Below, piece by piece: positions 40,567 through 53,390 of a DNA stretch of 64,000 nucleotides. Below the pieces are notes generated by a model that was not told the origin of the DNA, did no database searches, and saw only the letters and a list, made by a program, of their open reading frames with translations. The translations under genes were made by a program, and so were the position numbers. The stretch is taken from contig NC_088855.1 in the NCBI RefSeq assembly GCF_963853765.1, positions 3,906,001 through 3,970,000 of the forward strand. The letters run 5' to 3'. The stretch comes from Magallana gigas (lineage: Eukaryota). How positions within the stretch are numbered: the first letter of the stretch is position 1; each line of letters opens with the position of its first letter.

Positions 40567-42427
40567 ATGGCTGGCACTAGTTTCGCTTTGGTGTGTTGCG
40601 TTGTCGTGTTGCCTTCGGTAGCTGTAAGTACTGTCTTATCTAATCTTATAAACGATGACAGGATCTTTTTACTGTTTTTCTGAAAATAGTTCAAATTTGA
40701 AATATACTTTTTAAAATATAATTGATGGTAAAAAGTTTCTGAGTTTTAAATGTTCCAAGTGAAATCAATTTTAAGATTGTTGGTATTAATTTTCGAAAGG
40801 AGCATCATGAGAGAAATAAATAAAAAGCTAACTTTTTTTAAACAAAACAGCGATAACATTGGTTTTGGATTTATTTCAGGGTTATTGGTGGTCCAATCAG
40901 AACCAGAATCTGAATAACAATGTCAACGTAAACACAGGGTTCTACGACCCCCCTCCCGCCCCGGCGCCGGAACCCCCCGCACCCGCACCAAAGAAAGTAG
41001 TACACGCCACCAAAGACACCGTGGTCAGCATCAACTTCCACGCCCCCATCAAGAACAAGTTTATCCCCACCCTCAACATCGGAGGTTTCGGAGGCGGTCC
41101 CGCCCCCAAGGCCCCTTCAGCTTCACCCAAGAAGAAGAAGACTCCTAAATCCCCCAAGAAAGGAAAGAGGCCAGAACCTAAAAAGAAGACCGCTGCTCCA
41201 AAGAAGAAGTCCAAGGCCCCCAAATCAAAGGCCCCCAAGAGCTCCCCACCAAAGGGATCTCCACCCAAAGGTTCTCCACCTAAGGGATCCGGTGGCGCCG
41301 GACACGGTCTACCCATGAACCTTGTCTTCAACAACAACTTTCCCCAGAACATGATGAACGTTGTCGGAGCTCACAATAACGTCAGAGGCAAAGGCGTTCA
41401 CATGCCCAACAACAACGCTGGAGGAACCCAAAAGGTCAAACAGACCTACAAAGCCACAGGTGGAATTCAGACCCAGGGTGGATACCAGGGAGGACAGCAA
41501 GGAGGCCAGCAAGGGGGACCTCAGCAGGGTGGCGGACAAGGAGGGAGCCAGGGTGGATTTGGAAGGTGGGGTGGATCTCATTATTCCAACATCCACTCCG
41601 TCAAATACCCGAGCAATGACGTACAAGTCATCGGAAACGGAAACGAAGTCCACACAGTTGCCGGACTTTACAACAATGTCAAGTACCAGAAGAAAGTGGC
41701 TCCTCCGCCCATGCAGGGAATGCAGTTTAAACTTCTTCTGAACTTGCTCCAGAAGATGGTTGTTAAAGTGAATGCTCCACCAAAAACCACAACTACAACC
41801 ACAACAGAGCCTACAACAACAACCACTACCACTGAAGCTACCACAACTCCAGCAGAAACCACCACAACCACCGAGGCGACCACAACCACCACCACCACAG
41901 AGCCTACCACAACTACCACTGAAGCTACCACCACTACCACAGAGGCTACAACAACCACTACCACAGAGGCCCCAACCACTACATTCCCTTATAACCAAAT
42001 GTTGGAGATCCTGCTAGCACAGATGGCCTCTGGCTCCAACACACAGACACAGCAAGCCGCTGTTTTGGATATCATGGGACGAGGAGGTCAGAAAGCGGTC
42101 TCCATGAACGCCAACTCAGGATATGGTCAGCAGGCTACTCTGGACATCTTTGGTGCTGCCCAGCAAGCCCCAACAACCATGGGACCATACTTGGACCCAG
42201 TGGCTCAACTCGACCTCCTGGCTGCCGGTGGATCCATCTCTGGTGGCTCTTACGGCGGGTCTAGTTTTACCGCAGTCACACCGCCACCTGCTGGTGCCGG
42301 CGCCGCCGGATCAGCCGTGGATCTGACTTGGCTGAACAAGTACATGCCTCAACTGGCTCTCCACCAAAGGTCTCCAATCAAGGTCATCTCTGGTGGCAGT
42401 TACGGTAGCAGAAAGGCCGCCGTGTAG
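40567..42427 (+). CDS. Secreted low-complexity protein A (534 aa: signal peptide, Asn/Gln N-terminus, Lys/Pro/Ser block, Gly/Gln block, Thr-rich mucin-like block)
   Basis: join(40567-40623,40880-42427). Exon 1 encodes the hydrophobic signal peptide MAGTSFALVCCVVVLPSVA; GCT|gtaagt ... tatttcag|GGT is a phase 0 intron. AATAAA at 42560 and 42708. Paralogous to the gene at 43436-45153. Confidence 0.9.
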
Positions 42428-43392
42428 TGAGTGCATTAACTATCTGACTCTTATACCGGTATTGTTTTGCAATTTGTGTCTCAGTCAAACCACCTCTAAA
42501 TCTAATTTCTACGCATTTCTGCCGGAGCCTTGTATTTTATCAGTATTATCTTTGTGACCAATAAAGAACTTTTTCATACTTTCGATCAGACAGAGATGTA
42601 TGAAATCCGTCTTCTGGGACACGGTTGTGATCAACTGCAGGAATTTTGTGGTGTTCTTAATGTTATTTATTTCATCTGTGTTTTTATTGTCCTGTTGATC
42701 TTGTACAAATAAAGACTTTAGAGTTAAATGCTTTTACTTGTCATTAAAATATCATTGTTTAAATGAGGAGCCAATATGAGTGATAGAAAGAAAGAGAGAA
42801 ATAGAAAGGGGGTCATGACGATGCAAATGAACTCAAGCTTGATAATAATATTCATCTGATCGGTCGTCGTTAATGTCACAATGTTCACACGTTACCCACA
42901 ATCTTTTGTCATTAATTAAATCATTGATTAAAACAAATTACATGTTAAAGAAATATTTGTGGCATTTCTCGCCGGGGAAGTTTGGTTCTATCCAAAATGT
43001 CTGCAAAATTCCTCTAAATATGCAGAAACGTCTCAAAGGTTGAATTAACTCCAAGTATCGCCACTTCCACATGCACGTAATTTCTTTGATTAATCAATGA
43101 CTAATTAATGATCATAAAATTAATAATTTACTAATTAATCGGGACCAAGTGTGCCTTGGAACGAGGAAAACAAATTCGGTGAATTCTGTCAAAACGTTGC
43201 CCTTTCTTGTCAGGGGGAAATTGCAAAAGTGTCGATAAGAAGATTCTAATTAATTCTAATTACCATACAACTAATCACGTACAGGTAAAAGTGTCATTAC
43301 CATTTACCTGTCGACCCTCATCACTGATAAAATGTACAATAAATGAATAATTCTAATTGATTTTGTGGACCGGCCTACATGGAGGGTTTGTG

Positions 43393-52700: not shown

Positions 52701-53390
52701 GGCGCCTTGGTGCTTGTTTGCAGTTGTGGACTTCCTAGTCGGCTCCTCTGGATTCCAGGTGCCATGGTTACCTGAGTCGTCGGCATCAGGGAATTAAATG
52801 GCATCCCAGTACTCAACCGAGAGTGCATCCCCACCCCCATCTGTGCCGCGAGTCTGGGGTCCGTGTGTTGTGAGTTCCTAAAACGCTGTGGCATGCTCAA
52901 TCGTGAGTTTTGTTGGAATGGCTGTTCGGCTCCATTAGGGTTTGACTAAAAAAAAGTATATTTGTGTTACATAAAAAATTCAAACGTAAATCAATTGAAA
53001 CTAAGCTTTAACATTCTTTAATGTAACACATATTATGTAACTTGAGTAAATTCACGTGAACAATAAATTATTATATTTTTTAAAATTTTACTAGTATGTT
53101 AATCTTAGAAATTGTTTGAACGATCAATGAAAGTTTTAAGATATGACTTTATGTACATACAATGCATCTAGAAAATTGTTTAGCTCGAAACAAATTGACA
53201 GATTTGTAATTTTTAAAACAAAAAAGTATGTGCGTTAGTTCCACGTTTTCTAAATTAATAAATTTCTATAAAAGTACATTTGAAAATGTTCAAAACATTG
53301 ATAAAAGTGAATTCATACCCCTGTGAAGAACTGTCCGTTTGTCAGGGTGATCGTACAAAGCAGACACACAGTTTTACAAACGACGTCCAT
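49751..53390 (-). CDS. Secreted Gln/Pro/Thr/Ser/Asn-rich disordered protein C (1088 aa)
   Basis: complement(join(49751-52945,53319-53390)). Exon 1 encodes MDVVCKTVCLLCTITLTNGQFFTG (signal peptide); GGG|gtatga ... ttttttttag|TCA is phase 0 and in frame with the 1049-aa ORF. No Cys in the mature region. Confidence 0.88.

What the first reader, a model, noticed from the sequence alone, without database searches (positions are those of the whole stretch)
40567..53390. Candidate undescribed extracellular-matrix gene cluster: three Cys-free secreted block proteins, an acidic protein and a GPCR between smoothelin and TRAF4
Seen: A, B and C share one design (tiny signal-peptide exon, phase-0 intron, one large exon). 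Their mature chains have no Cys and no globular domain I recognise, and alternate low-complexity blocks with short hydrophobic motifs. A strongly acidic ORF and an intronless GPCR sit in the middle, and the cluster is flanked by two conserved genes. Knowledge: molluscan shell, byssus and cement proteomes are rich in lineage-specific repetitive low-complexity secreted proteins. Inference: a co-expressed module for shell matrix, larval cement or mucus, in which the polycationic A/B and a polyanionic partner could coacervate, with a neighbouring receptor. Function is not shown by the sequence.
Basis: partly seen in the sequence, partly recalled or inferred. Interest (0 to 1): 0.7.

Follow-up and report, generated by a model that had tools for sequence, protein, structure and literature searches.

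The report
Oyster-only island of secreted disordered proteins
Between two ordinary conserved genes the Pacific oyster keeps a five-gene island found only in oysters, three of whose genes make cysteine-free, strongly basic, unfolded secreted proteins of unknown role; the genes are real and conserved, but nothing shows that they work together as one module.

Summary
A (40567-42427 +), B (43436-45153 +) and C (53390-49751 -) are real two-exon genes: a small signal-peptide exon, a phase-0 GT..AG intron, then one large Cys-free exon. RNA contigs show B's splice in this species; a related oyster's transcripts show A's and C's.

The window is Magallana (Crassostrea) gigas. All three are already in RefSeq under misleading automatic names (FNDC1, FLO11; orthologues 'mucin-19-like', 'AIM3-like').

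- A and B are paralogues. Each has a Lys/Pro polycation block, a 66-aa conserved core, a Thr-rich mucin stretch and short helical motifs.
- A third, 1,400-aa relative (D) lies on another chromosome.
- C is not detectably related to A/B (hhalign probability 1.4%).
- The order A-B-GPCR-acidic gene-C-TRAF recurs, as far as each fetched stretch reaches, in Crassostrea virginica, Ostrea edulis and Saccostrea cucullata. No relatives were detected outside oysters.
- A and B are under strong constraint (pN about 0.11-0.18, pS about 0.7). C evolves faster.
- AlphaFold2 finds no fold (pLDDT 35).

The acidic protein has no signal peptide, so the coacervation-partner idea lacks its secreted polyanion. Tissue, co-expression and function remain untested. 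My reading: an oyster-restricted family of small disulfide-free mucin-like proteins, plus unrelated neighbours held together by synteny.

The parts
40567..40623 (+). Gene A, exon 1: signal peptide (19 codons), followed by a GTAAGT donor
   Evidence: The identical exon is spliced onto exon 2 in P0024 transcripts.
40880..42427 (+). Gene A, exon 2 (515 aa plus stop). Cys-free, pI 10.0. The transcript continues to about 42645 by orthologous contigs. This is XP_011454318.1, named 'FNDC1'.
41120..41284 (+). A: Lys/Pro/Ser-rich polycationic block (net +18 in 40 residues)
41576..41773 (+). A: 66-aa conserved core shared with B (67% identical) and, weakly, with D
41804..41982 (+). A: Thr-rich mucin-type stretch (imperfect 21-27-nt repeats)
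43436..43489 (+). Gene B, exon 1: signal peptide
   Evidence: The splice joint is seen in contigs of runs X1 and X2.
43633..45153 (+). Gene B, exon 2 (506 aa plus stop). Cys-free, pI 10.2. RNA contigs end at 45281-45308.
44146..44343 (+). B: conserved core
46337..47473 (-). Intronless rhodopsin-family GPCR (378 aa). Orphan; relatives at E<=1e-20 are found only in oysters.
   Evidence: RNA contig 46235-47475.
47924..48433 (+). Acidic 169-aa ORF (pI 4.05, no signal peptide, 4 Cys), with AATAAA overlapping its stop codon
   Evidence: X1 contig 47619-48543 covers it, but the strand is unknown.
49751..52945 (-). Gene C, exon 2 (1064 aa plus stop). Cys-free, rich in P/S/Q/T/N, pI 11. This is XP_011454338.1, named 'FLO11'.
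53319..53390 (-). Gene C, exon 1: signal peptide
   Evidence: The spliced orthologue P0007 joins at the same point.
36653..36805 (+).
   Evidence: The O. edulis neighbour of A carries I-set Ig domains.
55684..56283 (-). Flank: MATH-domain exon of a TRAF gene
   Evidence: The C. virginica neighbour has zf-C3HC4, zf-TRAF and MATH domains.

Best explanation
A and B are tandem paralogues of a small oyster-restricted family. Its third member, D, lies on another chromosome. I read them as secreted, intrinsically disordered, disulfide-free 'mini-mucins'.

Shown:
- Each has a signal peptide on its own exon.
- Then comes an Asn-rich N-terminus and a Lys/Pro polycation block.
- Then a strongly conserved 66-aa core, a Thr-rich stretch, and a C-terminal part with short conserved hydrophobic helices.
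- A and B are under strong purifying selection.

Inferred mechanism:
- After export the Thr-rich stretch is O-glycosylated into an extended brush.
- The polycation block binds polyanions such as acidic or sulfated glycans, acidic matrix proteins or mineral surfaces.
- The conserved core and helices mediate non-covalent self-association or partner binding.
- The proteins would therefore build or coat an extracellular layer (mucus, matrix or adhesive film) without disulfide cross-links.

C is a separate, faster-evolving, single-copy, secreted basic disordered protein with its own short conserved motifs. The GPCR and the small acidic, probably intracellular, protein are neighbours. On this reading the five genes form an oyster-specific gene island kept together by conserved microsynteny, not a demonstrated functional unit.
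For: - Gene models and splicing.
- Composition: 0 Cys, net charge +29, +35 and +58, Thr 13-14%.
- No Pfam domain.
- AlphaFold2 mean pLDDT 35, with only short helices, which fall on the conserved hydrophobic motifs.
- A and B are paralogues. D is related at hhalign probability 99.8%, with collinear blocks and the same two-exon design.
- C versus A/B: hhalign probability 1.4%.
- Motif searches of the own genome find only A, B and D; C is single-copy.
- Constraint: A and B pN 0.11-0.18 against pS about 0.7. C pN 0.35. Acidic gene 30% identity.
- Synteny in C. virginica, O. edulis and S. cucullata.
- An exhaustive HMM search of the core against 1.84 billion representatives found only the oyster cluster; four of the six weak hits were checked and are unrelated.
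- GPCR relatives at E<=1e-20 come only from oysters.
Against: - There is no protein-level evidence of secretion or glycosylation.
- Tissue and stage of expression are unknown, because run names are coded.
- In the one raw poly(A) run sampled (X21) only 7 reads fell on the 6 kb laid, so expression there is very low.
- A low-confidence AlphaFold model from a 7-sequence alignment does not prove disorder.
- Gene order kept across four genera could still reflect shared regulation; I could not test this.
- The strand of the RNA over the acidic ORF is not known.
Confidence: 0.55

Rival explanations
1. The five genes are one co-expressed extracellular-matrix module for shell matrix, larval cement or mucus. 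Polycationic A/B coacervate with the polyanionic protein, and the GPCR acts as an associated receptor.
For: - The order recurs in the stretches fetched from four oyster genera.
- All five appear lineage-restricted.
- Contigs of run X1 (guessed RNA) cover B, the GPCR, the acidic region and C's 3' end.
- The charges are opposite: +29/+35 against -37.
Against: - The acidic protein has no signal peptide or hydrophobic N-terminus.
- It is barely conserved (30% identity; length 169 against 395 aa).
- The gene calls shown for C. virginica and O. edulis do not include it.
- X2 holds B and the GPCR but neither the acidic region nor C's 3' end.
- C is unrelated to A/B.
- The paralogue D lies outside the cluster.
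Confidence: 0.1
2. A, B, D and perhaps C are specifically shell-matrix or periostracum proteins, secreted by the mantle or larval shell field and occluded in or lining the shell.
For: - Their composition resembles the repetitive low-complexity domains typical of mollusc shell matrix proteins (established knowledge).
- D carries long Gly/His/Gln-rich repeats.
- TAATTA homeodomain-type sites are densest in the window upstream of B: 5 in 600 bp, the window maximum. A and D each have 2.
Against: - No shell proteome or mantle expression could be linked to these accessions.
- Thr-rich mucin stretches are equally typical of mucus and glue proteins.
- C's upstream region has no TAATTA site.
Confidence: 0.2
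3. The ORFs are annotation artefacts or non-functional low-complexity reading frames.
For: Low-complexity sequence can keep long frames open by chance. The automatic names are meaningless.
Against: - Spliced transcripts exist.
- Open frames of 500-1100 codons are kept in four genera.
- pN is far below pS for A and B.
- Motifs are conserved down to single residues.
Confidence: 0.02

Closest known systems
Small soluble, non-gel-forming mucins (for example human MUC7) and insect mucin-type salivary glue proteins (Sgs; Pfam New_glue)
   Same: They are secreted proteins with a central Thr/Pro-rich stretch of the kind that is O-glycosylated, flanked by non-repetitive ends. They lack VWD/CK polymerisation domains. 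MUC7 also has a basic N-terminal part (from my own knowledge).
   Different: There is no sequence relationship. New_glue scores 15.8 bits against a cut-off of 31. A/B have no Cys at all, have a Lys/Pro polycation block, and have a conserved 66-aa core seen only in oysters.
Gel-forming mucins (MUC19, MUC5AC), the source of the RefSeq name 'mucin-19-like'
   Same: A Thr-rich stretch.
   Different: A/B have no VWD, C8, TIL or CK domains and no cysteines. The name reflects composition only.
Mollusc shell-matrix and adhesive proteins with repetitive low-complexity domains (KRMP, shematrins, mucoperlin; sandcastle-worm polycation/polyanion cement)
   Same: They are lineage-restricted, secreted, low-complexity and strongly charged. 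D's Gly/His/Gln repeats look like structural matrix proteins.
   Different: No homology was found. Membership of that group is operational (found in shell or cement) and was not testable here. The coacervate model needs a secreted polyanion, and this cluster does not encode one.
Vertebrate SCPP gene cluster (secretory calcium-binding phosphoproteins)
   Same: It is an analogy only, from my own knowledge: a tandem cluster of fast-evolving disordered secreted proteins, with the signal peptide on its own small exon and phase-0 introns, some of them P/Q-rich like C.
   Different: It belongs to an unrelated lineage. Here only A and B are paralogues. No SxE phosphorylation motifs were tested and no link to mineral is shown.

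Membership tests
Gel-forming mucin (MUC19-like) | Cys-rich VWD/C8/TIL assemblies and a C-terminal cystine knot | tested here: not met
   No Pfam hit. 0 Cys in the mature chains.
Gel-forming mucin (MUC19-like) | Pro/Thr/Ser-rich stretch of the O-glycosylated type | tested here: met
   29 of 40 residues are Thr/Ser in A 321-360 and B 241-280. Glycosylation itself was not tested.
FNDC1 / fibronectin type III proteins (RefSeq name of A) | fn3 domain | tested here: not met
   No fn3 hit in A at E<=1.
Flo11 / AIM3 (RefSeq names of C and its orthologue) | Flo11 adhesin domain, or homology to yeast AIM3 | tested here: not met
   No Pfam family matches C at E<=1. The only relatives found are oyster orthologues.
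Drosophila New_glue (PF21827) | Score above the Pfam gathering threshold | tested here: not met
   15.8 bits against a cut-off of 31, E 0.011, lying over the Thr-rich stretch.
Rhodopsin-family GPCR | 7tm_1 profile across seven helices | tested here: met
   76 bits against a cut-off of 30.5, residues 41-333. The nearest solved structure is the CCK-A receptor at E 1.6e-11, so no ligand class can be assigned.
Mollusc shell matrix protein | Detected in a shell proteome, or expressed in the mantle or shell field | not testable with these tools
   No accession was found in the searchable papers. Run tissues are coded.
Polycation/polyanion complex-coacervate adhesive | Both partners secreted | tested here: not met
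   The acidic protein starts with a charged, non-hydrophobic N-terminus and has no upstream spliced exon in RNA contig 47619-48543.
A/B/D family (defined here) | Collinear blocks (Asn-rich motif, INFHAPI-type motif, Lys/Pro block, core), Cys-free, and a two-exon gene with a phase-0 intron after the signal peptide | tested here: met
   A, B and D meet this. C fails on sequence: hhalign probability 1.4%.

The most novel reading that the evidence does not exclude
A, B and D define a previously unnamed, oyster-specific class of disulfide-free structural proteins. They would polymerise through conserved Asn-rich beta-prone motifs and short amphipathic helices, and would bind anionic glycans or mineral through a Lys/Pro block. 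In this reading they are a load-bearing or adhesive component of an oyster-specific material such as larval cement, periostracum or shell organic matrix. The conserved island with C and the orphan GPCR would then reflect shared regulation.
Probability: 0.15. Interest if true: 0.6.

Novelty: new member of a known kind. Interest (0 to 1): 0.35.

Why it matters
Oysters build shell, cement and mucus from proteins that are mostly lineage-specific and poorly catalogued.

This work corrects four misleading RefSeq names. It defines a small Cys-free family (A, B, D) that is under unusually strong constraint for low-complexity sequence. It also shows a five-gene oyster-only island held in synteny across four genera.

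That gives experimenters a short, well-delimited list of candidates for extracellular materials. It does not reveal a new kind of system, and the functional claim remains open.

Tried and rejected
- **Homology of C to A/B.** BLASTP and profile-profile comparison are both negative. The small motif echoes are not collinear.
- **Remote relatives of the core.** In the exhaustive HMM search the weak hits are large proteins. Pfam on four of them shows mostly fn3-rich proteins, and the cluster names of three are an amoebozoan, an insect and bacteria, so I reject them as chance beta-strand matches.
- **ESM Atlas look-alikes for B and C.** Nothing usable was returned.
- **Literature.** Searches by accession, LOC number, automatic names and SRR numbers found nothing relevant.
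- **A 'mucin-19-like' protein in a C. angulata larval proteome** (PMC7525975). It carries GI 762080102. I could not link it to A or B, and A bears a different name in that database release.
- **The larval-settlement candidate list** (PMC6337334). It describes Cys-rich or collagen-like proteins, not these.
AlphaFold2 gives no strands and pLDDT 30-37 over the core. This is no support, but with a 7-row alignment it is also no refutation.
- **Tracing C. gigas transcripts of A by exact protein.** Nothing is on record.
- **L022, a 3.6-kb contig of a C orthologue.** It proved collinear with the intron, so it is not spliced evidence.
- **The TATA-like element about 40 bp before A's ATG as the promoter.** Orthologous transcript contigs start at least 185 nt upstream of the ATG, so I make no promoter claim.
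Full report
**What is there**

The region holds five genes.

- **Gene A.** It starts at ATG 40567. A 57-nt exon encodes a typical signal peptide and ends at a GTAAGT donor. After a 256-nt intron with a pyrimidine-rich acceptor, one exon runs from 40880 to the stop at 42427.
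- **Gene B.** It repeats this plan: exon 1 at 43436-43489 and exon 2 at 43633-45153.
- **Gene C.** It lies on the minus strand, with exon 1 at 53390-53319 and exon 2 at 52945-49751.
- All three introns are phase 0. The products are 534, 524 and 1088 aa.
- **GPCR.** An intronless rhodopsin-family receptor lies at 46337-47473 on the minus strand (7tm_1, E 4e-21).
- **Acidic ORF.** A 169-aa ORF with pI 4.05 lies at 47924-48433.
- **Flanks.** A CH-domain exon lies upstream and a TRAF MATH exon downstream.

I joined exons only inside a local script, to translate them and count residues.

**Are the genes real?**

- **B.** Contigs of runs X1 and X2 (guessed to be RNA) skip exactly 143 bases, GT..AG, which places the joint at 43489|43633. 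One 1.7-kb contig covers the whole mRNA.
- **A.** Ten 1.8-2.1-kb transcript contigs from a sister oyster (92% nt identity) align to 40382-40624 and 40892-42645 and skip the intron. Their product, P0024, begins with the identical signal-peptide exon.
- **C.** The orthologue P0007 is a spliced product that joins the signal peptide to the large exon at the predicted point.
- **Annotation.** The protein lengths equal those of RefSeq XP_011454318.1 (534 aa) and XP_011454338.1 (1088 aa).
- **Acidic protein.** The exact 169-aa protein is in NCBI nr and EukProt.

**Species**

The window is Magallana (Crassostrea) gigas. A UniRef M. gigas fragment is 99% identical to the GPCR, and the cluster members carry C. 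gigas names. Earlier notes of this scan say the same.

**Relationships**

- **A and B are paralogues.** They are about 50% identical overall and share a 66-aa core at 67%, an N-terminal motif and a C-terminal motif.
- **D is a third relative.** A profile of the core finds one more relative in the 564-Mb genome, at C1 about 37.998-38.003 Mb. D has a 1,402-aa Cys-free exon. Its blocks are collinear with A (hhalign probability 99.8%, E 4e-30). Its gene design is the same: a signal-peptide exon, a GTATGT donor, then one giant exon. It adds long Gly/His/Ala/Gln, Gly-Pro-Pro-Pro-Gln and Asn-rich repeats.
- **No further members.** Motif searches of the genome find no more copies, and C is single-copy.
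- **C is not detectably related to A/B.** BLASTP finds nothing and hhalign gives probability 1.4%.

'Three of one design' therefore means the same gene architecture and composition, not one family.

**Distribution and constraint**

- **A and C orthologues.** Word-based searches find them only in oysters. A is 86% identical in C. virginica and 82% in O. edulis. C is 42-48% identical in C. virginica, depending on how it is aligned.
- **The core.** An exhaustive HMMER search of the core against 1.84 billion representatives returns one real hit, the oyster cluster. Four of the six weak hits were checked by Pfam or cluster names and are large unrelated proteins.
- **The GPCR.** It has no relative at E<=1e-20 outside oysters.
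- **Gene order.**
  - C. virginica has TRAF, C, the acidic ORF, the GPCR and B in the mirrored order.
  - O. edulis has an Ig-bearing gene, then A, B, the GPCR and an acidic-type ORF.
  - S. cucullata has the GPCR, B and A.
- **Substitution rates.** Synonymous sites are saturated (pS about 0.7).
  - Non-synonymous change is low for A and B (pN 0.11-0.18), similar to the GPCR (pN 0.20).
  - It is higher for C (pN 0.35).
  - The acidic gene keeps only two short anchors: 30% identity, and 169 aa against 395 aa in length.

**Nature of the proteins**

- No Pfam family matches and there are no Atlas look-alikes.
- The mature chains have no Cys. Net charges are +29, +35, +58 and +62 for A, B, C and D.
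- Thr makes up 13-14% of A and B, concentrated in one stretch.
- AlphaFold2 on a 7-row alignment gives mean pLDDT 35. It predicts only short helices, and these fall on the conserved hydrophobic motifs.

My reading is that A and B are small, disulfide-free, mucin-like, polycationic disordered proteins with short conserved interaction motifs. Export follows from the signal peptides by established rules. O-glycosylation, polyanion binding and self-association are inference.

**The module hypothesis**

- The acidic protein has no signal peptide and no upstream spliced exon in the RNA contig that covers it. A secreted coacervation partner is therefore not encoded here.
- The strand of that RNA is unknown. 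It may partly be the 5' region of the divergently oriented GPCR.
- Contigs of X1 cover B, the GPCR, the acidic region and C's 3' end. X2 holds B and the GPCR only. X5 holds B, parts of the GPCR and C's 3' end.
- Contigs show presence, not level, and the tissues are coded.
- In the sampled raw poly(A) run only 7 reads landed on the 6 kb laid.
- Conserved order over four genera is real, but on its own it does not show shared function.

**Comparison with what is known**

The automatic names (FNDC1, FLO11, mucin-19-like, AIM3-like, NPY2R-like) fail the defining features that I could test. Functionally, the closest analogues are small non-gel-forming mucins or glue proteins and mollusc low-complexity matrix proteins. 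Membership of the latter group is operational and was not testable here. No open-access paper in the library names these genes.

**Verdict**

This is an oyster-restricted gene island that contains a previously unnamed small family (A, B, D) plus unrelated neighbours. It is a new member of a known kind, namely lineage-specific secreted low-complexity proteins. It is of moderate interest, mainly as a candidate list for oyster extracellular materials.

Noticed in passing
L008:4359-8966 (G000:C1:37998358-38002965): D is a 1,400-aa Cys-free paralogue of A/B on another chromosome. It has the same signal-peptide-exon design and long Gly/His/Ala/Gln, GPPPQ and Asn-rich repeat modules. It has no Pfam hit.
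   Followed up: partly
window 42836-43435: There are five TAATTA (homeodomain-type) sites in the 600 bp upstream of B, the highest density in the window (mean 0.5 per 600 bp). A and D have 2 each and C has none.
   Followed up: partly
window 47474-47923: The GPCR and the acidic ORF are head to head, only 450 bp apart, and overlapping RNA contigs bridge the gap. In C. virginica the same pair is 3.9 kb apart. This may be a bidirectional promoter or a long GPCR 5' UTR antisense to the acidic ORF.
   Followed up: no
L009:14824-16008 and L010:17488-19132: The acidic ORF is 395 aa in C. virginica and split over two frames in O. edulis. The gene calls shown for those loci do not include it. Only the WSTEANYGS motif and the C-terminal EPCYD-type end are conserved.
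   Followed up: partly
window 48982-49379: An X1 contig runs past the AATAAA of C's 3' UTR (about 49350) down to a (GA)n microsatellite at 48931-48971. This may be a longer 3' UTR or a separate transcript.
   Followed up: no
window 45400-45800: A few stranded poly(A) reads of X21 lie downstream of B's contig end (about 45300). This may be an extended 3' UTR or an unannotated transcript.
   Followed up: no
window 40382-40566: Orthologous A transcript contigs begin at least 185 nt upstream of the ATG, so they include the TATA-like element that sits about 40 bp before the ATG. The true start site is unsettled.
   Followed up: no
window 29966-30094: A run of 129 N (assembly gap or masked stretch) lies inside the upstream gene. 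I left it untouched.
   Followed up: no
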